A DNA stretch of 64,000 nt from Macrostomum hystrix. Lineage: Eukaryota; Animalia; Platyhelminthes. Both the position numbers and the translations under genes were made by a program. The stretch lies in NCBI GenBank assembly GCA_950097015.1, contig CATNEN010000002.1, forward strand, positions 1,488,001-1,552,000. Direction: 5' to 3'. Shown one piece after another: positions 2,401-48,315 of the stretch (position 1 is its first letter; each line of letters opens with the position of its first letter). The notes under the pieces were generated by a model. It saw only the letters and a list, made by a program, of their open reading frames with translations, was not told the origin of the DNA and searched no databases.

Positions 2401-23979
<21,579 letters not shown>

Positions 23980-24530: not shown

Positions 24531-25169
24531 AAAAGTAAAAGTTTTTTATTTAAAAGTTTCAAAATTCGCATAAACTATGGCACAGAGAAATATTTTACAA
24601 CTCCTCCCTAAAACCCTGTTTAAATATCGAAATCAGTTTTTCGAATAAAATTAATTTGGTTTTTTAAACAAATGTAAGCTTGCATTAGAATAGATATTTG
24701 TTAGTCTGATGATTAAAAACAATGCAGGAGAATTTCTTCTGCGAAAATTTGCGAAGTCTATCGCTTTCCTTTCTTTCACAGAAATCATTGGTGTTAGAAC
24801 ACTCGCTGCTAGCATGTACATTGAGGTAAAACTGTACACTTCACGGCATCATTTTTATTGGGTTAGTAAGATTAAGGGGGACTGCAAGGTAACACTGGGA
24901 ACGAACATTCAAGACCGAAGTTTCATCCCAACGTTCGTTCTTGCTTATAACGTATTCGAAATTTTGTAGGCTGAAGGGGAAATATTCGATTTTTTCTTCC
25001 CCAAGCTAGCCCCTCACCTACTGACAATGTTCAGCCAGATTTCGCTTCCATGTCTGTTTCGGTGGGGCAGCAGCTACTGCATATAGGACTGGTAAGCCAG
25101 TTAACTTTCTTCCCATGATAGATTTTGAAAACTGATTTGCTTTGGCCATAACTTTCTGCTTCTGGCACA

Positions 25170-26193
25170 ATGGCTTCTGGTCAGGTAAGTGAGACCAGTT
25201 TAGTTATGATATGTTTATCGGAATGAGTCATTCTGCTTAGCAACAGCAATTTATTTGATTGCAGGACGATAGCATGGATTTTCACCGCGCCTTTCTGGCC
25301 ATAGACACTGATCATTCGGGGGAAATCACGGTCGAAGAGCTGCAGAGGTGTGAACCTTCAATTACTGGCTTTTAAACGTTAAGGTTAAAAAGTTATCTAA
25401 CATTGATGCAACTTGTCTAGCAAGTCGATCACAAATCTAAACAAATGGATAGAAATATCACTGGTGGAACAGCTAAATCCCCTTTTCTATCAGCTAAATT
25501 CCCTTTTCTAATAATAATAATTGATTACACCTGCCCCAATCGGGCCAGATGTGCAGCCGACAGCACAGCCGCAGCTATTCCGCGGCGCATCTGAAGACTG
25601 CGTACAGCTGTTCAGTCCATGGACTGGGGGACGCCACACCCACCTTCAATTATCCCAGCTAATGCTGGTACCCATTTAACAGCTGGGTGAACTGAAGCAA
25701 TGCAGAGTTAAGTGTCTCGCTAAAGGACACAAATTGTTTCAGTGGAGTCGGGAATCGAACCCCCGACCTTCAAGTCGTGAGTCCGACGCCCTAACCACTA
25801 GGCTACAACCTCTTTTCTAACAGCTATTTTGCTATTTAGTTAGGAGTTTGTAGCTAAGTGGTTAGAGCGTTGGACTCATGACGTGAAGGTCGGGGGTTCG
25901 ATTCCCGACTCCACTGAAATCATTTGTGTCCTGTAGCAAGACATGCACTATTCCCTTGACTAACAGCCACATCCTTATTCTAATAGCAGAATCACTAAAT
26001 CCATGACACAAAACGAATTTCCATCAGCTACTGCCGCAAGATGAACTACCAGGAGACATTCGTGCAGAAGTGGCTGATGCTGTTCGACGCAGACCAGAAC
26101 GGCCGCATCACCTACGACGAATATTGCAATGCGCTTGGTCTGCTACCTAAGAAGGATGTGGTTGCTAAGCACAAAGCGCAGAAGGGGAAGAAG
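25170..26193 (+). CDS. Two-EF-hand calcium-binding protein (TAL/tegument-antigen-type N-terminal domain); 3' end unresolved
   Basis: Exons 25170-25184, 25265-25347 and 26028-26193 give 88 codons: MASGQDDSMDFHRAFLAIDTDHSGEITVEELQSYCRKMNYQETFVQKWLMLFDADQNGRITYDEYCNALGLLPKKDVVAKHKAQKGKK. Canonical loops are DTDHSGEITVEE and DADQNGRITYDE. It ends at a phase-0 gtaagt donor with no stop codon. Confidence 0.85.
25512..25811 (-). mobile_element. Full-length tRNA-derived SINE (family A)
   Basis: Minus strand has an A box (tagcctagtggttagggcg), a B box (ggttcgattccc), a central gtgtcctttagcgagacacttaac...cattgcttcagttcacccagctg domain and an (att)n tail. Candidate 9-bp TSD cttttctaa at 25503-25511 and 25812-25820. 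Confidence 0.8.
25843..25942 (+). mobile_element. 3'-truncated SINE family A copy, inverted relative to its neighbour
   Basis: tgtagctaagtggttagagcgttggactcatgacgtgaaggtcgggggttcgattcccgactccactgaaatcatttgtgtcc matches the head of the 25512-25811 copy. Confidence 0.75.
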
Positions 26194-26571
26194 GTAAGTA
26201 AAGAGAAATGTCCTTTCACAAACAAAATTTCAGTGGTACAAATACAGACTTGACGTCAAGAGGCGCTTCAAAAACTATTTTCAAATTTTCACTCCATTAT
26301 ACAAATTAAGCAAAGGGAACTATTATTCAGAGTGTCTGTTTGCGTACAACAAGCTCATTTCATTTTATTTATGTCTGAGCTTTTCTTAGCCGAGAATTGT
26401 AGGACGACGTTAAAACGAAAATTCTAAAATTAAATTTGGAACTTCGTAACTGCCTCAAGTGTGCTGTACTTGAATCTGTAATTGCGAACGGCATTGTGCA
26501 CGTAGCGAAAACAAAGCCTTTTGTTTGATTGCTGATGTTGTGGGTTTCGTTACGATAATTCCATAAATAGT

Positions 26572-26698
26572 TTTCTAGAACTTTCTACCACTTGTTATAA
26601 CACTCTGTTGTTTCCAGAATCTTCTCTGCGCCTCCCCCGCGGGCTATCTATGAGAACTTTCTAGAAAGTTCTCCCACTCGCTCCCCAGGCTATAAATA
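26572..26698 (+). promoter_or_regulatory. Three heat-shock elements (HSF sites) plus TATA box upstream of the intronless GTPase
   Basis: tTTCt-aGAAc-tTTCt (26572-26586); tTTCc-aGAAt-cTTCt (26611-26625); aGAAc-tTTCt-aGAAa-gTTCt (26653-26672, inside the perfect palindrome gagaactttctagaaagttctc); TATAAATA at 26691-26698. Confidence 0.85.
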
Positions 26699-27036
26699 GA
26701 AACCCCCGCGCGGTGCACACACTCAAAAGCTTTCCAGTATTTAATAATACTGCTGTTACAAATATACGCTTATCCAGTCGACTGCCGAGTGCTCCTTTCG
26801 GCGCTAGACTTACATTTACCAACGCTACAATTGGAATCTCTGTATTCGTTACTTCAAGAATACAACAGCTGAATAATATTTACCTATTCGTCGATAACAT
26901 TTTTGACGACATAGTTCCGTTTCTTTCTTAAGTGGGCCGAAAAAAACAGTAAACAGGTGTAAGATTTGCACATAAATACGACACACCTAGAACACACTGG
27001 CCAGGTGTCACAGACTCTGTTGCGAAGGCTGCAATC

Positions 27037-28887
27037 ATGAGCCAATCCTGCTCCGAGTTTGCCAGAAGGCAGCTGTGCGACCCGAATCCACTGCCAAAAC
27101 AATCTACTGAGGAGTTTGCAGGTGAAATTTTGCATCTGCGCAAGCAACTCACACCTCCAAAGTCACCGTGCCAGTGCCTCAAAGGCAGCTGCTTCTGTCC
27201 AGTTTCGTTCACCATCGGCGACATCAGGCAATGCGCCAAGCCGCCAAAGTACCTGCTGGTCGTTGGAGAGACTGGCGCTGGCAAGAGCACCTTCATCAAT
27301 GGCATCGTCAATGCGTTCTACAAAGTGAAATTCTCCGATCCATTCCGCCTGAAACTGGTCACTGATCAAGAGGGTCAAACTGCAGGCGCAAGCCAAGCTA
27401 AATCACAGACATCCAAAGTGACCATTTACACTCTGTTCCCCGTCAGCACTGGTGGCACGGACATATGTTGCTCGAGCGCCATGGGCTGCCCGCTGACTGT
27501 GATCGACACTCCGGGATTCGGCGACACTGGCGGTCTCGCTGAGGACGAGAAGATTGTGAAGAAGATTGCCAAAGTGCTCGGCGAGGATGGAGCCTCCGTT
27601 CCAGGAATGTCAGGCATTCTGCACACCATCGCATTCGTGGTAAAGGCCTCGCTGAACCGGCTCACCATTCCACAGAAGTACATCATCGACCAGACCCTCG
27701 CTTTGTTTGGGAAAGACGTCGAGGACATCATCTGGCCGGTGATAACCTTCGCAGACAGCGGTGAGCCGTCCGCTCTAGCTGCTCTCAAGGAGGACGGCGT
27801 ACCGCACAAGAAGTACCTGAAGTTCAACAATGGAGTGCTCTATGCAACAAACAACAATCCGGACTCAGCTGAATCGACGTCCGGTTCGTCGGACAGGGAC
27901 AAGAGAGCGCTGAAGCGGAAGCTGAAGTCGATTTTTTCGGTTTGGGAGGACGGCGAGGATCAGTACGGAGATCTGTTTGAAGCGATTCAGGAAGCTGAAG
28001 ATGGCATCTCACTGCAGAGCACTAAAGAGGTTTTGAAAAATCGAACAGAACTTGAATTCACCATGGAATCTCTGATGAAGAATGTCAGAGCCGGTATCAA
28101 CTGTTTGGTGTCCTTAGGCGAGAAGTTGGATTTGGTCGACTCGCTCGACAAAGTCATTCAGGACGCGGATAAGCTGAAGACACGGAAAGTTATGGTGCCC
28201 AAAGTCCGAAGGATTCCGGTGACCCATGGAGGTTACGTAACACTTTGCATGGTGTGCTGCAAGACCTGCCATGATAACTGTTCATACAAGGATGACAAGG
28301 ACAAAGCACGGTGCGTAGCGATGGGTCGTGACGGTCACTGTACTGTTTGTCCCAAGAAATGCTTCTGGGATCAGCACTGCAATCGAGATTACTATTTCGA
28401 GGACTTCGAAGAGGAGGAAAACGTGACTGTGCAGGAGATCGCCGACAAGTACCAGGTGCGACTGAATGAAAGAAATGCCAAGCAGGATATAGTTAAAGCT
28501 CTGCTGGCTGACTTCATTAAGGTTCATGAGGATGTGGCCTACAACTTGGTGACGATCAACAAGTGTCTGTTGTCGCTGGAGAAACTGGCACTCCGTCAGT
28601 ATCCTCTGAGCGTGGTCGAGTACGTCGACAACCTTATCGTGGCTGAGAAGATAGTTCGCAAACAAGGCTGGGAAGCGAGGGTGATGCATCTGGAAGGCGC
28701 CAGAGAGTCGGCGCGAATCATCGAAGCTGCCAGATCAGGAGACGACCCGTTCGGCGAACTCAAAGAGGAGGTGCTGGCCAGGTGCAAAGCTTCTCTAAAG
28801 ATGGAGTTGAAGAAGAGTGATGGATCGCTGGCAAAGTTCAGTGACATGCTTGACTGTGATGTTGCTTCCTCTGAAGCCTCAATGTGA
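27037..28887 (+). CDS. Intronless TRAFAC-class P-loop GTPase (AIG1/GIMAP/septin-like G domain) with Cys-rich and helical C-terminal region, 616 aa
   Basis: Uninterrupted ORF with Walker A GETGAGKS and Walker B/G3 VIDTPGFGDT, plus a Cys cluster CMVCCKTCHDNC...C...CTVCPKKCFWDQH. Confidence 0.85.
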   Translation: MSQSCSEFARRQLCDPNPLPKQSTEEFAGEILHLRKQLTPPKSPCQCLKGSCFCPVSFTIGDIRQCAKPPKYLLVVGETGAGKSTFINGIVNAFYKVKFSDPFRLKLVTDQEGQTAGASQAKSQTSKVTIYTLFPVSTGGTDICCSSAMGCPLTVIDTPGFGDTGGLAEDEKIVKKIAKVLGEDGASVPGMSGILHTIAFVVKASLNRLTIPQKYIIDQTLALFGKDVEDIIWPVITFADSGEPSALAALKEDGVPHKKYLKFNNGVLYATNNNPDSAESTSGSSDRDKRALKRKLKSIFSVWEDGEDQYGDLFEAIQEAEDGISLQSTKEVLKNRTELEFTMESLMKNVRAGINCLVSLGEKLDLVDSLDKVIQDADKLKTRKVMVPKVRRIPVTHGGYVTLCMVCCKTCHDNCSYKDDKDKARCVAMGRDGHCTVCPKKCFWDQHCNRDYYFEDFEEEENVTVQEIADKYQVRLNERNAKQDIVKALLADFIKVHEDVAYNLVTINKCLLSLEKLALRQYPLSVVEYVDNLIVAEKIVRKQGWEARVMHLEGARESARIIEAARSGDDPFGELKEEVLARCKASLKMELKKSDGSLAKFSDMLDCDVASSEASM

Positions 28888-29422
28888 ATGAGCGTCGATA
28901 AGTTCAGCTCGCGGATGAATTTGGAGCGTAAAAAGTTTCATTTTGACGCAACTCATCGTTATTGTATACAATAGTGAAATTATTTGCCAAGGACACTCGC
29001 ACTGAAGCATCATTTTTAGCTTAGCAGACACAAATTCTACATGAACACTCAGCCACACGGATAAGTACATTGGCACACGCTCGACTTTCTCATCGTCAGG
29101 CAGTGTGCAAAACTCACTGTGTCTCTTATCATAGACCGTTTCCGGTCGTCGTTTTACCATAGACCATAGAGCGTTCAAGTTTTTGACGCCCTACCTTAGC
29201 TCTCCTGCCCTCTCTGGAGTGTTCTGTGCCGTGTCACATTGTAAATTAAAAATAATTCTTCCCCATTTATTAGTATAGTTTATAAACTGGCACTTTACTC
29301 GTATTCAGACATTTTTATTTTACTCCAAGCTCGTCTTTCATTGAATACATTGAATAATTAAAAACGACTTGAATAAATGGCAATTCGTTAACTTCGAAGC
29401 GATGCTATTCCATTGAAAACTA

Positions 29423-30866
29423 TAGCATTTTGCAGTCAAGTTTGAACTGCGGGCATTCAAATTAGACGCTTTACCAGATCTCACTGCTGGCACAAATGCT
29501 ATCTATGGCCTAGACAAAATCCCACTGGTGGGCACTCAATTTAGACAAGGGGCATTCAAATTAGACAAGTTCTCAGGCGCATTGGCTGGGCAATTCAAGA
29601 TCGTGTTGCGTCTGTTGTCAGACAACCATTCTGTGAACCCTGAACTATGAAGATAAGAACAAGTTATAACAAAGTAAGCATGTGTGAACAAACAAAACAG
29701 GGTGCTCAGCACATCAATGAACAAGAGTCTCACAAGAGTCTCATCTGATAGAGAATTCAAACGATGTCTTCATTTGCCAAGACAGCGTGGGATGAAGCGG
29801 AGCGTGTGCTGATACCAGTGAACGCACTTCAGTGGAGTCACGTCATCCATCGCGATTTCCCCGCACCTCTGCAGCACCATCAGTCTCCATTGAACGGCAG
29901 TCATGTCAGGAGGCGGAACAGCCAATTCTCTCTGAACTTCAGGATTGGACAGCTGCCTCTTGACTGCTGATTTAAAGGCACTGTGAGCCAGTTCAACTGG
30001 GTTCAGGAAAGGAGAGTAAGGTGGTAAGATCTTCAGTTCAATTCGACAAAACCAAACCTCCGGGATTTGCAATCCGTGGTGAAAGCGGGCACCATCCAGC
30101 ACGATGACGCACGAATGGTTCTCTTCCAGATTCTCTGCAATCTTTTCACATAGGTTGGTCACAAATTCCTGGACTCTCTCACGTGTGGTGCTACCGGAAT
30201 CCAGTCTGTAGTGAACGAGGTTCAATGCCGGCGACGTGGCCATGATCATGTTCAGTGATGGACTTCTCTGCGTATGCACAGTCCGTCTCACCCTGGCTTC
30301 ACGCGGACTCCTTCCCTTGGTTCGCCGGGTCCAGAGGCAGTAGCCGGTCTCATCTAAATGGACCAGGCAAGTCGTGACCGACAAATCCACGAGCCAGTTG
30401 GCGAATTCAACGCGTCTTTGCTTGACCTCATGCGAATTTCTCGCTTCAGGTACATTCATTCGACGGTGCCTGGCTCCTCCCCTTGGTAGCGCGTATCGCT
30501 GGCCATCCTGAACAAACTTGTTCCAGATGTTGTACACTGATGATCTCTTGACATCCAACATGTTGGCAATTTCAGCCACAGAGTCACCACGTTGGCATGC
30601 CCCAATAATGAGGTCACGCTTCTCTCTGGAAATTCTTGCATAGCGACGAATCGGATTGTCCATGGTCTTTCTCTCTGGCACACATAGACTTTCCGCTGCT
30701 TGTCTAATTTGAATGCCCGTTGTCTAAATTGAGTGCCCGTCAGCGTGTTTCAGTTTGTGCCACAGACATAAAGTTCTGCTTGACTTGGGGACGGATTCTG
30801 AAATTTGGCTCTTCCCTTCTTGTCTAATTTGAATGCCCGCAGTTCAAACTTGACTGCAAAATGCTA
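29423..30866 (-). mobile_element. IS630/Tc1-mariner superfamily DNA transposon, complete ends, probably internally deleted
   Basis: Perfect 45-bp TIRs (tagcattttgcagtcaagtttgaactgcgggcattcaaattagac) flanked by TA at 29421-22 and 30867-68. An inner inverted pair of repeats lies at 29530-29568 and 30700-30738. Confidence 0.93.
29770..30681 (-). CDS. DDE_3-type transposase, 303 aa, probably defective
   Basis: N-terminal HTH (VAEIANMLDVKRSSVYNIW), then HLDETG, VLDGARFH and PPYSPFLNPVE. Confidence 0.85.
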   Translation of the reverse strand: MPERKTMDNPIRRYARISREKRDLIIGACQRGDSVAEIANMLDVKRSSVYNIWNKFVQDGQRYALPRGGARHRRMNVPEARNSHEVKQRRVEFANWLVDLSVTTCLVHLDETGYCLWTRRTKGRSPREARVRRTVHTQRSPSLNMIMATSPALNLVHYRLDSGSTTRERVQEFVTNLCEKIAENLEENHSCVIVLDGARFHHGLQIPEVWFCRIELKILPPYSPFLNPVELAHSAFKSAVKRQLSNPEVQRELAVPPPDMTAVQWRLMVLQRCGEIAMDDVTPLKCVHWYQHTLRFIPRCLGK

Positions 30867-32096
30867 TAATGAGGTTAATGCCACTCATTTAACATTAAAT
30901 AAGTTTTTAAAGCAAGTTTTAAAAAAATTAATTTGCCTACTTATTTTTAATAGCCTCAATATTCGAATCGTTTCACTTATTCCACAGCTGTCACAGGCTT
31001 GTTAAACAATTTTGTTTCAAAATATACCTAAATATTAATGAGCGTTAATTAATGCTTCGGCATGGCGACTTCATACAAAACTGTTTTAAGTTTTCAAATT
31101 ACATTTCTGTTTTTAAAAGAAAAAAATAAGAAAATAGATAAGAATATTAATATCGATAATATGGATAATATAGATATTAAAGTATAGACGATATAGATAT
31201 AAGTATAGATAACTATAGAAAGAATATGTAGATATAGCTGATAGATAAGAAGAAGATAAGAACATAATACGAAAATAAAAATAAGAAGCCAAAAATAGGC
31301 TACCTGTTGTTACTAAAATTTTTCTGATGTACCCGTCTGCTTGTGGTCATATGTATATTTGATCAACAGAATGGTAGAGTATGACTTAGCCATATAGATT
31401 TCTGAATATGGCTATCTACGGGCCATCCATGATAATTAAGCGTGAAAAATAGCTAGCCATTGTTAATCACTATACAGATTGACCCAAGGGGTGTTGGATA
31501 CAGGTCCGATACTCCGATTATTGTCCATTTTTTAATTTTTTGTCAATATAACAATCAAATAACAATATTTCGCCCATTTAATCTTCTTTAAACTGCTAAT
31601 TTGAACTGCTAAAGGAACAATTTCTAATTTGTTGGAAATTTCAAACTTTTTCAAGCCATTCGGCGTCAGGATCTCAAAAATTAATCGTCAAGATATTCAG
31701 CAATTCCTGTCAACGATCCTGGTGGCAAGGAGAAAATATCAATTCTCCTTGGCGAATCCTGATTGGTTCAATAATATAATAACTAACAATATAATCAATA
31801 CGACAGAGTCACACTAATAAACATGATGAAATTTTGTGAATATCTTTCTATTTTGCCTTGTTTCTACTACGTAATATGCACTCTTTCTGCTTAAATTGAC
31901 TGCTAATTTTAATTCGTAAATATGTATTTATTCTTTAGTGGGAGCGGAAATTAACTATATTTAATTTTAAAAAACTTTTTTTTCCCGAAAATATACTGTA
32001 AGCGTAATCCAATCAAACTCGAATTAGTTTCGTCTATGGTCAAAACCTATTTATAAAACTGCCGATAAAGAGCGCACGATCAACGAATCTCTGCAG

Positions 32097-35000
32097 GCTG
32101 GCAAGTCTGCCCGTACTGTGAAAGTGGCCAAGAGGCGCAAGGAGCAGGAGGAGGTCACCACCGAGACTCTGCCGTCGCCGACTCAGGAAGAACCGAAGGA
32201 AGAAGTTGTGCAGGTGCGAGCCATTTTATTCATTTGTACGATCGAAACGGCTTGATAGAAGTACATTGGGATAAAATATAATCATTAATTGAGATAAACG
32301 GTGGGACTGTGTAATGAAGGTTGGAACTGTGTAATGAAGGTTGGAACTGTGTAATGAAGGTTGGAACTGTGTAATGAAGGGTGGAACTGTGTAATGAAGG
32401 TTGGAACTGTGTAATGAAGGTTGGAACTGTGTAATGAAGGTTGGAACTGTGTAATGAAGGTTGGAACTGTGTAATGAAGGGTGGAACTGTGTAATGAAGG
32501 GTGGAACTGTGTAATGAAGGTTGGAACTGTGTAATGAAGGGTGGAACTGTGTAATGAAGGGTGGAACTGTGTAATGATGGTTGGAACTGTGTAATGAAGG
32601 GTGGAACTGTGTAATGAAGGTTGGAACTGTGTAATGAAGGGTGGAACTGTGTAATGAAGGGTGGAACTGTGTAATGAAGGTTGGAACTGTGTAATGAAGG
32701 TTGGAACTGTGTAATGAAGGGTGGAACTGTGTAATGAAGGTTGGAACTGTGTAATGAAGGTTGGAACTGTGTAATGAAGGTTGGAACTGTGTAATGAAGG
32801 TTGGAACTGTGTAATGAAAGGAGGAACTATGTAATGAAGGTTGGAACTGTGTAATGAAGGGTGAGACTGTGTAATGAAGGGTAAGAGTGTGTAATGAAGG
32901 GTGAGACTGTGTAATGAAGGGTAAGAGTGTACAATGAAGGGTGAGAGTGTGCAATGAAGGATGAGACTGGGATGAAGGGTGAGGCCGGGATGAAGGGTGA
33001 CTATAAAGGAAGGGCGAACAATTTAAATCACGGCATTTGAACTCCCGAATCCCAAAATAATCCCAATCCCTAAGCTCACATAAAATCGAACCCTCTGGCT
33101 TTAACCAGGCCGCCTCGGTGGCACCGGTGAGCGCCGCAACCGTCGCCGCCCCGGCCGACGAGCCGCCGACGACGTCAGCGCCGCCGAAAGCGCGTGTCCG
33201 CAACCAGCCAATCAGCTCCAGCGGGCTGATGCACTTCAGCCGAGCCAGAATGTTCCAGCGGAAGGCTCTCTACCGACTAGTCAAGAAGTCAGCCGGCGCT
33301 AAAAAGTCCACATCCGGTAAATCGACTCCGAAGGCCGCCGGCGCCGCTGCCAAGACTGCGCAGAAGCCGATTGGCGGCGAGAAGAACGGCGGCTCCCGCC
33401 TGGTGCCGCGTTCTCGCCAACCTCGCAGCCTGCCGACCGAGGCTTCTCCGACAATCCGACGACGTCGGCCGAATCGCAGCTTCTCCCAGCAGCGTCGACG
33501 CCTGAGGGCGTCCATCAGGCCAGGCGGTGTGCTCATTCTGCTGGCCGGCAGGCACCGCGGCAAGCGGGTGGTGTTCCTGCGGCAGCTGGAGAGCGGTCTA
33601 CTACTGGTCACTGGCCCGCTGCGCGCCAACGGCTGTCCGCTTAGGCGAGTCAGCCAGAGTCACGTGATTGCCACCGCCACCCGACTGGAGCTGGAAGACC
33701 TTCACCTGCCGGACAGGATCAACGATCTCTACTTTAGACGGTTCGTGCTTCTCAGTGTGGACTCACATCCCAATGGACTCACATCCCAATGGACTCACAT
33801 CCCAATGGACTCACATCCCAATGGACTCACATCCCAATGGACTCACATCCCAATGGACTCACATCCCAATGGACTCACATCCCAATGGACTCACATCCCA
33901 ATGGACTCACATCCCAATGGACTCACATCCCAATGGACTCACATCCCAATGGACTCACATCCCAATGGACTCACATCCCAATGGACTCACATCCCAATGG
34001 ACTCACATCCCAATGGACTCACATCCCAATGGACTCACATCCCAATGGACTCACATCCCAATGGACTCACATCCCAATGGACTCACATCCCAATGGACTC
34101 ACATCCCAATGGACTCACATCCCAATGGACTCACATCCCAATGGACTCACATCCCAATGGACTCACATCCCAATGGACTCACATCCCAATGGACTCACAT
34201 CCCAATGGACTCACATCCCAATGGACTCACATCCCAATGGACTCACATCCCAATGGACTCACATCCCAATGGACTCACATCCCAATGGACTCACATCCCA
34301 ATGGACTCACATCCCAATGGACTCACATCCCAATGGACTCACATCCCAATGGACTCACATCCCAATGGACTCACATCCCAATGGACTCACATCCCAATGG
34401 ACTCACATCCCAATGGACTCACATCCCAATGGACTCACATCCCAATGGACTCACATCCCAATGGACTCACATCCCAATGGACTCACATCCCAATGGACTC
34501 ACATCCCAATGGACTCACATCCCAATGGACTCACATCCCAATGGACTCACATCCCAATGGACTCACATCCCAATGGACTCACATCCCAATGGACTCACAT
34601 CCCAATGGACTCACATCCCAATGGACTCACATCCCAATGGACTCACATCCCAATGGACTCACATCCCAATGGACTCACATCCCAATGGACTCACATCCCA
34701 ATGGACTCACATCCCAATGGACTCACATCCCAATGGACTCACATCCCAATGGACTCACATCCCAATGGACTCACATCCCAATGGACTCACATCCCAATGG
34801 ACTCACATCCCAATGGACTCACATCCCAATGGACTCACATCCCAATGGACTCACATCCCAATGGACTCACATCCCAATGGACTCACATCCCAATGGACTC
34901 ACATCCCAATGGACTCACATCCCAATGGACTCACATCCCAATGGACTCACATCCCAATGGACTCACATCCCAATGGACTCACATCCCAATGGACTCACAT

Positions 35001-46099: not shown

Positions 46100-48315
46100 T
46101 GTAATAACTAAGGCCGAGGCTATTTTTAGTGAGCAGACAAAACTCTCAATCTTTACTGCCACGCTGAGCGCGCGTCCATATATTATTTGCTAGAACTGGG
46201 GTGGCGACACCCACCCCGCTCCGCTACCAATCAAACGACCCAGGTGTACACCTGGGCCTGGCTCACGTGCGTACGCACACTACATCTCTCCCCCTTCGAA
46301 CAGAAACTGTGGGGAGACAAAAAAGAACGAATTCGAGAAGCAAGATGTCGAAAAGAACGAAAAAGAACTCGACCGAAAAAAATATGCAGCTATTGGAGGA
46401 AATAAAACACTCGCATTGATAGTCGCATCGGACTTGCAAAGAAAAGCGTGCTTGTGATTGTTAATCTCAGTAGAAAAGTCAGTTCGTTTTCAGTCCTTGG
46501 TTTAGTCCTTGTAGATCTTCACGCCACCCCGTGCAGCGCGGGGGTGCGGGCGCAGCGCCACCGGGGATTCGGCCGGGTTCCGCGCCGCCTCGCCTGGAGT
46601 TTCTGGCGCGGCAGCCTGCGGCCTGGCACCAGCGTCGTCTGATTCTGGGGTGACGACCTTGACCGCCGTGCAATGCCGCCAGCAGGCCGCGCCGTCACGA
46701 CGCAGCATCAGCGAGTTGCCGGCCACCCGCTGGACTGTCCAGGCGCCGCTCTCGAATGGCGTTTGCGTCTTGCTGGCACCGACTCGCCGTCGCAGCACCG
46801 AATCGCCGACCTGGATTTCGTGCCGCCGTGGCCGCCTCCTGGCGTCCGCTCGCTGCTTCATCGCGGCCTTGGCGCTCGCATCCATCTCTCGCAGCCGCTG
46901 CTCGTTGATGCGGACGCGCTGGGATGGCCGGGCGGCGGGGATGACATCATTTGGTCGCCGGCCCATCAGCAGCTCGGCTGGCGCGCGGCCCGTGGCTGTG
47001 TGCGGCGTGTTCCTGTAGGCCAGCAGCCACTCGTCCAGAGCAGCCCTCCAGTCGCGCCGCTCCTCGATTGCCGCCCGCACGACCTTGTTGATTGAGCGGT
47101 TCAGCCGCTCTGTCATGCCGTTGGCGGCTGGGTAGTAAGGCGTGATGAGGCGGTGCTTGATGCCGTAGCTTTCTAGGAAACGGCCAAACTCCTTGGATGA
47201 AAATGGCGGCCCGTTGTCAGTAACGAGCTCCTGCGGGATGCCAAATCGCGCGAACATTTCTCGCAGGCGCGGGACCAGTGCCTCGGCCGTCGTTGTCTGC
47301 ATGAGCTGCACCTCTGGGAATCTCGAGTATCTGTCCACGCACACCAGCAGCATGTTGTTGTTGATCGGGCCTACAAAGTCAGCCCCAATCGACAACCAGG
47401 CGCCCTTAGGGATAGGCGTCGGCTGTAGAGGCGTAGCCCGGACGGCTGGCGTGTGAGACGTGATGGCACAGCTGCGGCACCGACTGACGAACTCCTCCGC
47501 TTGTGTTGCCATTCTCGGCCACCAGACCTTGCTGCTGAGCCTTGCGGTCGTCTTCTGCGAGCACTGGTGTCCTTGGTGCGCCAGCTCGAGCATCTGCTGC
47601 CGTAGAGCTGCTGGCACGACAATCCGCTGATGCCGAAGAAGAACTCCGTCTACCGCCGACAGCTCCTCTCGCAGCGCGTGGAGTGACCGCATCTCAGCGC
47701 TAGAGCGGTCCCATTGGCCGCCTTGCATCGCTGCTATCGCTGCCCGGATAACTGGGTCGCTGGCTGAGCTCTTGCGGATGTCTTCGAGCGTGAGCGCCTT
47801 CGGGACAGCCGCCTGCGCTACCTCGTTTATGTAGGCCTCTCTCAGCTGCTCGCTGGTCCTACGTCCTTCAGCGCTTAGAGGCTGCCTGCTGAGTATGTCT
47901 GCAGCATTGGATGCTCCTGGCTGGTATTCGACCTTGAATACCAGGTGCTGGATACGCAGCGCCATACGCTCGACTCGTGGAGGCGGCCGTGACCCTGGCG
48001 CATACATGGCTGTCAGCGGCTTGTGGTCGGAGATCACCGTGAATTCGGGCGATCCATACAAGTAGTACTCAAACTTCAGGCAGCCGAACTTCACGGCGAG
48101 CGCCTCTTTTTCGGTCTGCGAATATCGCCGCTCTACGTCGGAGAGGGTCCGGCTCGCGTATGCGACTGGCCGCGAACTGCCGTCGTGCTGTACTTGCGCC
48201 AGGATTGCGCCGAGTCCGGTTGGTCCCGCGTCCACAATCAGCTGTGTCCGTAGCCGCTTGTCCAGGCTGTCCAGGTGTACACCTGGGCCTGGCTCACGTG
48301 CGTACGCACACTACA
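46100..48315 (-). mobile_element. Ty3/Gypsy LTR retrotransposon with a large internal deletion
   Basis: 5-bp TSD CAGAT at 46095-46099 and 48316-48320. The 3' LTR is 46100-46284 (TG...CA), with PPT ggggagaga at 46285-46293. Only the first 45 bp of the 5' LTR remain (48271-48315, identical to 46240-46284). Confidence 0.92.
46502..48235 (-). CDS. Pol fragment: RNase H plus integrase (Gypsy)
   Basis: DAGPTGLGAIL...RPVAYASRTL..ERRYSQTEKEALA (RNase H), H-x3-H...C-xx-C zinc finger, GADFVGP, LVTDNGPPF, PYYPAANGMTER; no internal stops. Confidence 0.9.
   Translation of the reverse strand: MDAGPTGLGAILAQVQHDGSSRPVAYASRTLSDVERRYSQTEKEALAVKFGCLKFEYYLYGSPEFTVISDHKPLTAMYAPGSRPPPRVERMALRIQHLVFKVEYQPGASNAADILSRQPLSAEGRRTSEQLREAYINEVAQAAVPKALTLEDIRKSSASDPVIRAAIAAMQGGQWDRSSAEMRSLHALREELSAVDGVLLRHQRIVVPAALRQQMLELAHQGHQCSQKTTARLSSKVWWPRMATQAEEFVSRCRSCAITSHTPAVRATPLQPTPIPKGAWLSIGADFVGPINNNMLLVCVDRYSRFPEVQLMQTTTAEALVPRLREMFARFGIPQELVTDNGPPFSSKEFGRFLESYGIKHRLITPYYPAANGMTERLNRSINKVVRAAIEERRDWRAALDEWLLAYRNTPHTATGRAPAELLMGRRPNDVIPAARPSQRVRINEQRLREMDASAKAAMKQRADARRRPRRHEIQVGDSVLRRRVGASKTQTPFESGAWTVQRVAGNSLMLRRDGAACWRHCTAVKVVTPESDDAGARPQAAAPETPGEAARNPAESPVALRPHPRAARGGVKIYKD

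What the first reader, a model, noticed from the sequence alone, without database searches (positions are those of the whole stretch)
26572..26698. hsp70-style promoter (three perfect HSEs + TATA) in front of a non-chaperone GTPase
Seen: two 3-unit and one 4-unit perfect alternating nGAAn arrays at about 40-bp spacing. The last is a 22-bp perfect palindrome ending 18 bp before TATAAATA, about 340 bp upstream of the GTPase ATG. The gene is intronless, unlike all its neighbours. Established: this architecture (multiple HSEs, TATA, no introns) typifies HSF1-induced genes. Inference: a strongly heat- or proteotoxic-stress-inducible GIMAP/septin-like GTPase, possibly an undescribed arm of the stress or immune response. 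Its induction could also interfere with the surrounding same-strand transcript.
Basis: partly seen in the sequence, partly recalled or inferred. Interest (0 to 1): 0.8.

Follow-up and report, generated by a model that had tools for sequence, protein, structure and literature searches.

The report
Heat-shock solo LTR upstream of GTPase
The hsp70-style promoter is real, but it is a leftover 332-bp end piece (solo LTR) of a heat-responsive jumping gene that landed 169 bp in front of an older immune-type GTPase gene in a Macrostomum-type flatworm, so any heat induction of that gene would be a recent accident of transposition.

Summary
Observation confirmed: three perfect heat-shock elements (3+3+4 nGAAn units; 26573-26585, 26612-26624, 26654-26671) lie before TATAAATA (26691-26698), 346 bp upstream of an intronless 616-aa GTPase ORF (27037-28887).

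Interpretation partly supported. The promoter is not the gene's own. It lies in a 332-bp solo LTR (26536-26867) with TGTTGT...ACAACA termini and a perfect 5-bp target-site duplication (GCTGA). RNA-like contigs from four public runs match it from exactly 26536, at about 98.5% identity, then run on into unlike sequence. So the family is multi-copy and expressed.

HSE-bearing LTR retrotransposons were shown in 2025 to be heat-activated in the sister species M. lignano. This scan had already met the same LTR family, including a 332-bp solo LTR, on other DNA of this genome.

New here is the position: co-oriented with a GIMAP/Toc/septin-class GTPase, with no ATG in the roughly 315-nt leader. LTR-driven or HSE-enhanced heat induction of the gene is plausible (about 0.45) but untested. 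The only runs available show low basal expression and nothing that ties this locus's LTR to the gene. Four homologue loci have no HSE upstream of the gene.

Verdict: new member of a known kind, moderate interest.

The parts
26531..26535 (.). Left copy of the 5-bp target-site duplication (GCTGA)
   Evidence: Read directly from the sequence. It is identical to 26868-26872.
26536..26867 (+). Solo LTR, 332 bp, of an HSE-bearing LTR retrotransposon. U3 is about 26536-26720 and R-U5 about 26721-26867.
   Evidence: It has TGTTGT...ACAACA termini and a perfect TSD. Contigs of four runs begin their match exactly at 26536 and one ends at 26868. They are about 98.5% identical and have unlike flanks. The window holds no second copy.
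26573..26585 (.). HSE1, three perfect inverted nGAAn units
26612..26624 (.). HSE2, three perfect units
26652..26673 (.). HSE3, four perfect units (26654-26671) inside a 22-bp perfect palindrome
   Evidence: self reverse-complement hit
26691..26698 (+). TATAAATA box of the LTR. The predicted transcription start is about 26720-26730 (inferred, not mapped).
   Evidence: All differences between this LTR and the expressed copies lie downstream of it, at 26726-26824.
26868..26872 (.). Right copy of the target-site duplication (GCTGA)
26873..27036 (+). Pre-existing upstream flank and 5'UTR of the GTPase gene. It has no ATG. An acceptor-like AG sits at 26931-26932 after a pyrimidine tract, the in-frame stop is at 26950, and a CATAAATA lies at 26971-26978.
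   Evidence: Locus-identical RNA contigs start at 26971 (X3) and 27004 (X4).
27037..28887 (+). Intronless CDS of a 616-aa GIMAP/Toc/septin-class GTPase. The G domain spans about residues 70-270. It is followed by a long helical hairpin, a Cys/His-rich beta insert (residues 404-447) and a helical tail.
   Evidence: Low-depth contigs with no differences cover it.
28888..29314 (+). 3'UTR, at least to 29314. AATAAA-type signals follow at about 29359-29378.
   Evidence: Contigs cover 28883-29057 and 29160-29314; sequence.
26026..26194 (+). EF-hand exon of the surrounding same-strand host gene. The intron after it contains the LTR, the GTPase gene and a Tc1/mariner element.
   Evidence: GT..AG joints 25181>25262 and 25345>26026, and a 1224-nt contig that continues beyond this exon outside 25000-30500. 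Pfam EF-hand.
29421..30868 (-). Separate Tc1/mariner transposon downstream of the gene. It is not part of the LTR or the gene.
   Evidence: Perfect 47-nt terminal inverted repeats. DDE_3 transposase ORF at 29770-30681.

Best explanation
The 'hsp70-style promoter' is the U3 region of a 332-bp solo LTR (26536-26867). A young, multi-copy LTR retrotransposon left it behind, and that element's promoter is built from three heat-shock elements and a TATA box. The element inserted, duplicating the target GCTGA, into an intron of an EF-hand host gene. The insertion point is 169 bp upstream of a pre-existing intronless GIMAP/Toc/septin-class GTPase gene and in the same orientation. LTR-LTR recombination then removed the element's body.

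Inferred mechanism: on heat stress, HSF trimers bind the ten nGAAn units and fire the LTR's core promoter at about 26720-26730. A solo LTR has no internal element sequence behind it. Transcripts that pass the weak promoter-proximal poly(A)-like signals therefore run through R-U5 and the 169-nt flank into the GTPase ORF. The roughly 315-nt leader has no ATG, so the first AUG is the GTPase start. Alternatively, the HSE array acts as a proximal enhancer on the gene's own start region.

Shown here: the LTR identity, its multi-copy and transcribed nature, the geometry, and low basal expression of the gene. Inferred only: heat activation of this copy (by analogy with M. lignano) and its effect on the GTPase, which I put at about 0.45.
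For: -: TGTTGT/ACAACA terminal inverted repeat, perfect 5-bp TSD, length 332 bp, no second copy in the window.
- in all four runs a contig (depth 10-92) starts its match exactly at 26536. In X4 the match ends at 26868 and the contig runs on for 218 and 124 unlike letters. In X1 and X3, 777-845 unlike letters lie to the left.
- the contigs differ from the window only at 26726-26824. The GTPase contigs have 0 differences, so the LTR contigs come from other copies.
- there is no RNA at 26288-26535 in any run.
- (PMC12801592): M. lignano Ty3/Mdg4 LTR families with 1-4 HSEs are induced more than 250-fold at 37 C, and mutating the HSEs abolishes reporter activation.
- no ATG between 26650 and 27037; in-frame stop at 26950.
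- no perfect HSE upstream of the gene at four homologue loci, so HSEs are not a family trait.
- scan notes report the same 3+3+4-unit LTR, 331-333 bp long, in full-length Gypsy copies and as a 332-bp solo LTR elsewhere in this genome. These are leads, and they agree with my own tests.
Against: - The superfamily (Ty3/gypsy) cannot be read from a solo LTR, and I could not see the flanks of the RNA contigs.
- No contig shown bridges 26867/26868 from this locus's LTR into the gene.
- At 26807 and 26824 every contig carries the non-window letter, so transcription from this particular LTR is not seen in the (presumably unstressed) runs.
- Unlisted contigs cover part of 26868-27023 in X1 and X3, and I could not inspect them.
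- In M. lignano, host genes next to HSE solo LTRs were only mildly induced.
- Poly(A)-like hexamers in R (AATAAT at 26743, AATATA at 26761) could end LTR transcripts early.
- The LTR may be silenced.
Confidence: 0.85

Rival explanations
1. Passenger solo LTR. The LTR is a heat-shock-type promoter by descent, but at this locus it is silenced, or its transcripts end inside R-U5. The GTPase is then expressed only from its own start region, possibly with spliced-leader trans-splicing at the acceptor-like AG at 26931-26932, and is not meaningfully heat-inducible. This rival concerns the consequence of the LTR, not its identity.
For: -: basal GTPase coverage begins at 26971 (X3) and 27004 (X4). No locus-specific LTR letters are seen in RNA. 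In X4, the listed contigs account for the whole bin 26840-27023, leaving nothing for 26869-27003.
- in M. lignano only two solo LTRs lie near host genes, and both genes are only mildly up-regulated.
- poly(A)-like hexamers lie in R.
- a strong pyrimidine tract plus AG lies at 26917-26932.
Against: Ten perfect HSE units lie within 470 bp of the ATG. In C. elegans, HSEs carried by transposons are associated with heat-induced up-regulation of nearby genes (PMC6927752). The runs available are not heat-shocked, so silence there says nothing about stress. The leader is free of ATGs.
Confidence: 0.45
2. Native, evolved heat-shock promoter of the GTPase gene. On this view the LTR-like ends are coincidence, and the repeated copies elsewhere are paralogous promoters.
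For: Perfect HSEs and a TATA box sit in the right orientation and at the right distance. The leader has no uATG.
Against: The repeat boundary is set independently by the RNA contigs. It coincides with TG...CA ends and a perfect 5-bp duplication. The contigs continue into sequence unlike both flanks. Four homologue loci have no perfect HSE upstream of the gene. The same LTR is reported on full-length Gypsy copies in this genome.
Confidence: 0.03
3. The LTR is the 5' or 3' LTR of a truncated or gene-carrying element, so the retrotransposon brought the GTPase in or the GTPase sits inside it.
For: The LTR and the gene are adjacent and co-oriented. The gene has no introns, as a retro-copied gene would.
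Against: The target-site duplication flanks the LTR alone. No second LTR or LTR fragment lies anywhere in the 64-kb window. The neighbouring repeat is an independent Tc1/mariner with its own perfect TIRs. Intronless standalone or large-exon genes are usual for this GTPase family: the coral L003 gene is 1587 nt uninterrupted, and M. lignano L001 has a 964-aa single ORF.
Confidence: 0.02

Closest known systems
HSE-containing, heat-activated Ty3/Mdg4 LTR retrotransposons of Macrostomum lignano (for example Mlig-id115|Mag with three HSEs); Ustyantsev et al., Mob DNA 2025, PMC12801592
   Same: Both are from flatworms of the same genus-level group. Both have canonical HSE arrays in the LTR upstream of a TATA box and start site. 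Both are multi-copy and transcribed. Solo LTRs near host genes exist in M. lignano too.
   Different: This is a different species and a different LTR sequence, and I could not test homology to the M. lignano families. Heat induction is not measured here. This copy is a solo LTR placed 169 bp upstream of a host ORF and co-oriented with it.
ONSEN (ATCOPIA78) of Arabidopsis, a Ty1/copia element with HSEs in its LTR
   Same: A retrotransposon LTR that has taken up the host heat-shock factor pathway. From my own knowledge, new ONSEN insertions can make neighbouring genes heat-responsive, which is the scenario proposed here.
   Different: It is a plant element of a different superfamily. The effects on neighbouring genes were shown experimentally there and are only inferred here.
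Helitron-borne HSEs that rewire the Caenorhabditis heat-shock response (Garrigues et al., eLife 2019, PMC6927752)
   Same: An animal transposon supplies HSEs to nearby non-chaperone genes and brings them into the HSF-1 regulon in a species- or strain-specific way.
   Different: That is a DNA transposon acting as a source of binding sites. Here the source is an LTR with its own TATA box and start site. HSF occupancy and induction were shown there and not here.
hsp70 gene promoters (multiple HSEs, TATA box, intronless gene)
   Same: The layout is the same: perfect inverted nGAAn arrays within about 120 bp of a TATAAATA.
   Different: It is not attached to a chaperone gene, it is not conserved at homologous loci, and it is bounded by LTR ends and a target-site duplication.
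GIMAP/AIG1, Toc34 and septin GTPases, and the uncharacterised animal 'AIG1/septin-type G domain' family that is often fused to FN3 and stonustoxin-type MACPF/helical/thioredoxin domains
   Same: The P-loop and DTPG motifs are present. AIG1 Pfam scores above its cut-off. The best structural matches are GIMAP7, GIMAP2, Toc34 and septins. The full-length fold matches ESM Atlas clusters of this family at TM 0.58-0.65.
   Different: It is a standalone form without FN3 or MACPF. It has a C-terminal helical hairpin with an invariant Cys/His cluster that canonical GIMAPs and septins lack. I found no member with a known function.

Membership tests
Solo LTR of an LTR retrotransposon | TG...CA termini or a short terminal inverted repeat | tested here: met
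   TGTTGT at 26536-26541 and ACAACA at 26862-26867
Solo LTR of an LTR retrotransposon | A 4-6 bp direct target-site duplication immediately flanking the LTR | tested here: met
   GCTGA at 26531-26535 and at 26868-26872, a perfect match
Solo LTR of an LTR retrotransposon | Other copies share the same boundaries but have different flanks | tested here: met
   Contigs from four runs match from exactly 26536, and to 26868 in X4. They are about 98.5% identical and run on into unlike sequence.
Solo LTR of an LTR retrotransposon | No adjoining internal element (PBS, gag-pol, PPT) and no partner LTR | tested here: met
   The flanks are host intron and the GTPase gene. blastn of the LTR against the window finds only itself.
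Solo LTR of an LTR retrotransposon | Assignment to the Ty3/gypsy superfamily | not testable with these tools
   This needs the internal region of a full-length copy. It is reported only in the scan's earlier notes. A 30-nt pattern scan of metagenome contigs found nothing.
HSF-dependent heat-shock promoter | At least three contiguous alternating nGAAn units, repeated close to a TATA box | tested here: met
   3+3+4 perfect units lie 20-125 bp upstream of TATAAATA. Four of the window's 5 hits are here against 1.1 expected for the whole window.
HSF-dependent heat-shock promoter | HSF occupancy and induction by heat | not testable with these tools
   Only four unstressed-looking runs were offered, all kept as contigs.
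HSF-dependent heat-shock promoter | Conserved promoter of the gene it precedes | tested here: not met
   It lies inside an LTR with a TSD. There is no perfect HSE upstream of the gene at four homologue loci.
Heat-activated HSE-LTR retrotransposons of Macrostomum (PMC12801592) | Canonical HSEs in the LTR upstream of the start site | tested here: met
Heat-activated HSE-LTR retrotransposons of Macrostomum (PMC12801592) | Sequence or clade relationship to the Mlig-id115, id36, id55 or id38 families | not tested
   No supplementary sequences are held for the paper.
GIMAP/AIG1-Toc-septin GTPase class | G1 P-loop GxxxxGK[ST] and G3 DxxG | tested here: met
   GETGAGKST at residues 77-85 and DTPG at 157-160. 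Both are invariant across 36 family members.
GIMAP/AIG1-Toc-septin GTPase class | Pfam AIG1 or Septin model above the gathering score | tested here: met
   AIG1 scores 28.4 against 27, a marginal pass. Septin scores 26.1 against 26.2, just below.
GIMAP/AIG1-Toc-septin GTPase class | G-domain fold closest to GIMAP, Toc or septin structures | tested here: met
   The top Foldseek hits are GIMAP7 3zjc (E 2e-7), GIMAP2, Toc34 1h65 (TM by target 0.60) and septins. The model has mean pLDDT 77.8.
GIMAP/AIG1-Toc-septin GTPase class | G4 specificity motif (NKxD, or septin-type AKAD) and the GIMAP conserved box | tested here: inconclusive
   Only a TFAD motif at residues 237-240 (D240 invariant) sits at the expected place. 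The conserved box was not examined.

The most novel reading that the evidence does not exclude
The solo LTR has been taken over as a working heat-inducible promoter of this GTPase. The GTPase's nearest relatives form the GTPase module of stonustoxin-type MACPF pore-forming proteins. If so, a recent retrotransposon insertion has wired an innate-immunity-type effector into the flatworm heat-shock regulon. It would be an animal LTR counterpart of ONSEN-conferred heat responsiveness, and it could be tested by comparing animals with and without the insertion.
Probability: 0.2. Interest if true: 0.55.

Novelty: new member of a known kind. Interest (0 to 1): 0.35.

Why it matters
It corrects an attractive but wrong reading. 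The heat-shock architecture here says nothing about the ancestral regulation of this GTPase family. It does give a clean, datable natural experiment: a perfect HSE promoter dropped 169 bp in front of a host gene, in the same orientation and with a leader free of ATGs. Heat-shock RNA-seq in this species, or a comparison of lines with and without the insertion, would show directly how far a stress-responsive LTR rewires a neighbouring animal gene. The 2025 M. lignano study could address that question only marginally, with two solo LTRs near mildly induced genes.

Tried and rejected
- Native heat-shock promoter: rejected on the TSD, the LTR termini, the multi-copy contigs and the absence of HSEs at homologue loci.
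- GTPase carried inside a transposon: rejected. The only nearby TIR pair bounds a separate Tc1/mariner at 29421-30868, and there is no second LTR.
- ORF as the 3' exon of a longer MACPF-FN3-GTPase gene, suggested by the M. lignano relative aligning from residue 5: not supported. An in-frame stop lies at 26950, no joints fall in the gene, and standalone members of 500-600 aa are common.
- Exact-product look-up of the window protein: not on record.
- Looking for the LTR in earlier findings by sequence: blank.
- Supplementary tables and sequences of the 2025 paper: none held.
- A 30-nt exact-pattern scan of metagenome contigs: no match.
- tRNA search in the highly abundant inverted repeat at 25510-25945: none found.
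- NCBIfam scan of the protein: only P-loop noise.
- The repeat CAAAAGCTTTCCA shared by 24191 and 26724: treated as chance.
- The species name M. hystrix comes from earlier scan notes. I did not verify it. My own data show only that the nearest named relatives are M. lignano proteins.

Full report
**1. Observation**

- HSE1: TTCtaGAActTTC at 26573-26585.
- HSE2: TTCcaGAAtcTTC at 26612-26624.
- HSE3: four units at 26654-26671, inside a perfect 22-bp palindrome at 26652-26673 (self reverse-complement hit).
- TATAAATA at 26691-26698.

The pattern TTCNNGAANNTTC occurs five times in the 64-kb window, counting both strands, and four of those hits are here. About 1.1 are expected for the whole window. 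The ORF 27037-28887 encodes 616 aa without interruption.

**2. The promoter belongs to a solo LTR**

I laid the contigs of four public runs on 25000-30500. The organism is coded and each run holds about 48 Mb of contigs. The runs behave as RNA, because they show GT..AG joints at 25181>25262 and 25345>26026.

In every run, one contig of depth 10-92 starts its match at exactly 26536. It carries 2-5 other letters and often a 1-nt gap. Beyond the match it continues into sequence unlike the window.
- X4: the match ends at 26868, with 218 unlike letters before it and 124 after.
- X1 and X3: 777-845 unlike letters lie to the left.

The contigs on the GTPase ORF have no differences at all. The divergent contigs therefore come from other copies, not from strain variation.

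The sequence at these independently defined boundaries reads GCTGA | TGTTGT ... ACAACA | GCTGA. That is a 332-bp unit with a 6-bp terminal inverted repeat of the TG...CA type and a perfect 5-bp target-site duplication. No second copy or fragment of it exists in the window. The flanks are host intron on the left and the GTPase gene on the right. This is the anatomy of a solo LTR.

All differences from the expressed copies lie downstream of the TATA box, at 26726-26824. So the U3 region with its HSEs is identical to that of active copies, and the insertion is young.

**3. Literature and earlier scan notes**

PMC12801592 reports that LTR retrotransposon families of the Mag, CsRN1 and Gmr1/Osvaldo clades in Macrostomum lignano independently acquired one to four canonical HSEs.
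- Four families rise more than 250-fold at 37 C.
- Mutating the HSEs abolishes activation of an isolated LTR reporter.
- Only two solo LTRs of these families lie within 2 kb of host genes, and those genes are only mildly up-regulated (log2FC < 2).

The nearest named relatives of the window's GTPase are M. lignano proteins.

The scan's earlier notes on this genome describe a Gypsy family whose 331-333-bp LTR has three HSE arrays, 'ten perfect units' in all. They also describe a 332-bp solo LTR 2.57 Mb away, and they name the species as M. hystrix. These notes gave me the LTR lead. I tested the LTR hallmarks myself. I did not test the superfamily or the species.

**4. Geometry relative to the gene**

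The LTR is co-oriented with the GTPase gene and ends 169 bp before its ATG.
- From the predicted start (about 26720-26730) to 27037 there is no ATG. The nearest upstream ATG is at 26650. Only 2.2% of ATG-to-ATG gaps in the window are that long.
- The first in-frame upstream stop is at 26950.
- The only poly(A)-like hexamers in R-U5 are the weak variants AATAAT (26743) and AATATA (26761).
- An acceptor-like AG at 26931-26932 follows a 13/15 pyrimidine tract. It could be a spliced-leader acceptor, but this is untested.

**5. Expression evidence and its limits**

Low-depth (3-8), difference-free contigs cover the CDS and the 3'UTR to 29314.
- Bin 26288-26471 has no depth in any run.
- The depth in bin 26472-26655 is fully accounted for by the single foreign LTR contig in each run. 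For example, 92.3 x 120/184 = 60.2 in X2.
- Bin 29232-29415 is essentially empty.

The gene is therefore expressed as its own unit at a low basal level, not as intron read-through of the host gene.

Locus-identical contigs begin at 26971 (X3) and 27004 (X4). At 26807 and 26824 every contig carries the non-window letter, so nothing shown ties this locus's LTR to the transcript. Unlisted contigs cover part of 26868-27023 in X1 and X3, and I could not inspect them. Both read tools were at their caps, and no heat-shock run was offered.

**6. The gene product**

- Pfam: AIG1 28.4 bits (cut-off 27) and Septin 26.1 bits (cut-off 26.2).
- Homologues: 394 proteins in bivalves, fish, corals, an ostracod and M. 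lignano. They are typically 33-38% identical over 80-90% of the query. Many are fused to FN3, and some carry stonustoxin helical or thioredoxin domains.
- Nearest relative: M. lignano P0005, a MACPF_SNTX-helical-FN3-GTPase protein. It is 55% identical over residues 5-276.
- Alignment of 36 members: invariant G77-K83, D157-P159 and D240, plus a Cys/His cluster (C407, C411, C415, C426, C435, C438 and H447 invariant; C404 and H412 nearly so).
- AlphaFold2 model: mean pLDDT 77.8 and pTM 0.69. It shows a G domain, a long helical hairpin, a beta insert that carries the Cys/His cluster, and a helical tail.
- Structure searches: Foldseek ranks GIMAP7, GIMAP2, Toc34 and septins first. The ESM Atlas search returns uncharacterised 'AIG1/septin-type G domain' clusters at TM 0.58-0.65.

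So 'GIMAP/septin-like GTPase' is right at class level. The family's function is unknown. An immune or effector role is an inference from its fusion partners.

**7. HSEs are not a family trait**

The two M. lignano loci (L001, L002) and the ostracod locus (L004) contain no perfect 3-unit HSE at all. The coral locus (L003) has a single one, 1.9 kb downstream of the gene.

**8. Verdict**

The heat-shock promoter is transposon-borne. This is a new member of a kind already demonstrated in the sister species and already met by this scan on other DNA.

I put the solo-LTR identity at about 0.85-0.9. I put measurable heat induction of the GTPase through it at about 0.45, and selected co-option at about 0.1-0.2.

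Noticed in passing
window 25171-26194 and beyond 30500 (eL6 exon from about 33118): EF-hand exons are spliced (25181>25262, 25345>26026). One 1224-nt RNA contig then continues for about 970 nt that do not lie within 25000-30500. An eL6 (Ribosomal_L6e) coding exon lies at 33118-33780 on the same strand.
   Followed up: partly
window 25510-25945: An inverted-repeat element (arms 25713-25820 and 25836-25943, 87% complementary) has summed contig depths in the thousands in all four runs, with many variant copies and joints. It looks like a very abundant SINE- or MITE-like repeat. ARAGORN finds no tRNA in it.
   Followed up: partly
window 29421-30868: A Tc1/mariner element has perfect 47-nt terminal inverted repeats and an intact 303-aa DDE_3 transposase ORF on the minus strand. 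Contigs of 97-99% identity are present in the RNA-like runs, so the family may still be active.
   Followed up: partly
window 11215-11796 (-): A 193-aa ORF matches Pfam ETX_MTX2 (aerolysin-type beta pore-forming toxin fold) at 25 bits against a cut-off of 22. It lies inside the SGK-like kinase gene region, on the opposite strand.
   Followed up: no
L003 1417-4587 (coral Oculina patagonica): A called gene with stonustoxin helical and thioredoxin domains ends 29 nt before the intronless GTPase homologue. Together with the M. lignano MACPF_SNTX-FN3-GTPase protein, this shows a recurrent link between this GTPase family and stonustoxin-type modules across phyla.
   Followed up: partly
protein P0004: A 1010-aa homologue (40% identity, 81% coverage) is filed under a cyanobacterial MAG, Roseofilum sp. 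SID1. It is either contamination by host DNA or a horizontal transfer.
   Followed up: no
L001 4893-8608 (M. lignano): The MACPF-FN3-GTPase gene is one 964-aa ORF. It overlaps a 297-aa ORF in another frame (7715-8608). I suspect that second ORF encodes the missing C-terminal half, but I did not translate or align it. If so, the cause is a frameshift in the assembly or a pseudogene.
   Followed up: no
window 16402-16414: The only other perfect 3-unit HSE in the window (TTCttGAAatTTC) stands alone next to a long minisatellite, within the SGK-like gene region. One such hit is what chance predicts.
   Followed up: no
window 46502-48235 (-): A GC-rich (60%) Ty3/gypsy RNase H-integrase ORF of 577 aa has no matching copy of the HSE LTR nearby, so it belongs to a different retroelement family.
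   Followed up: no
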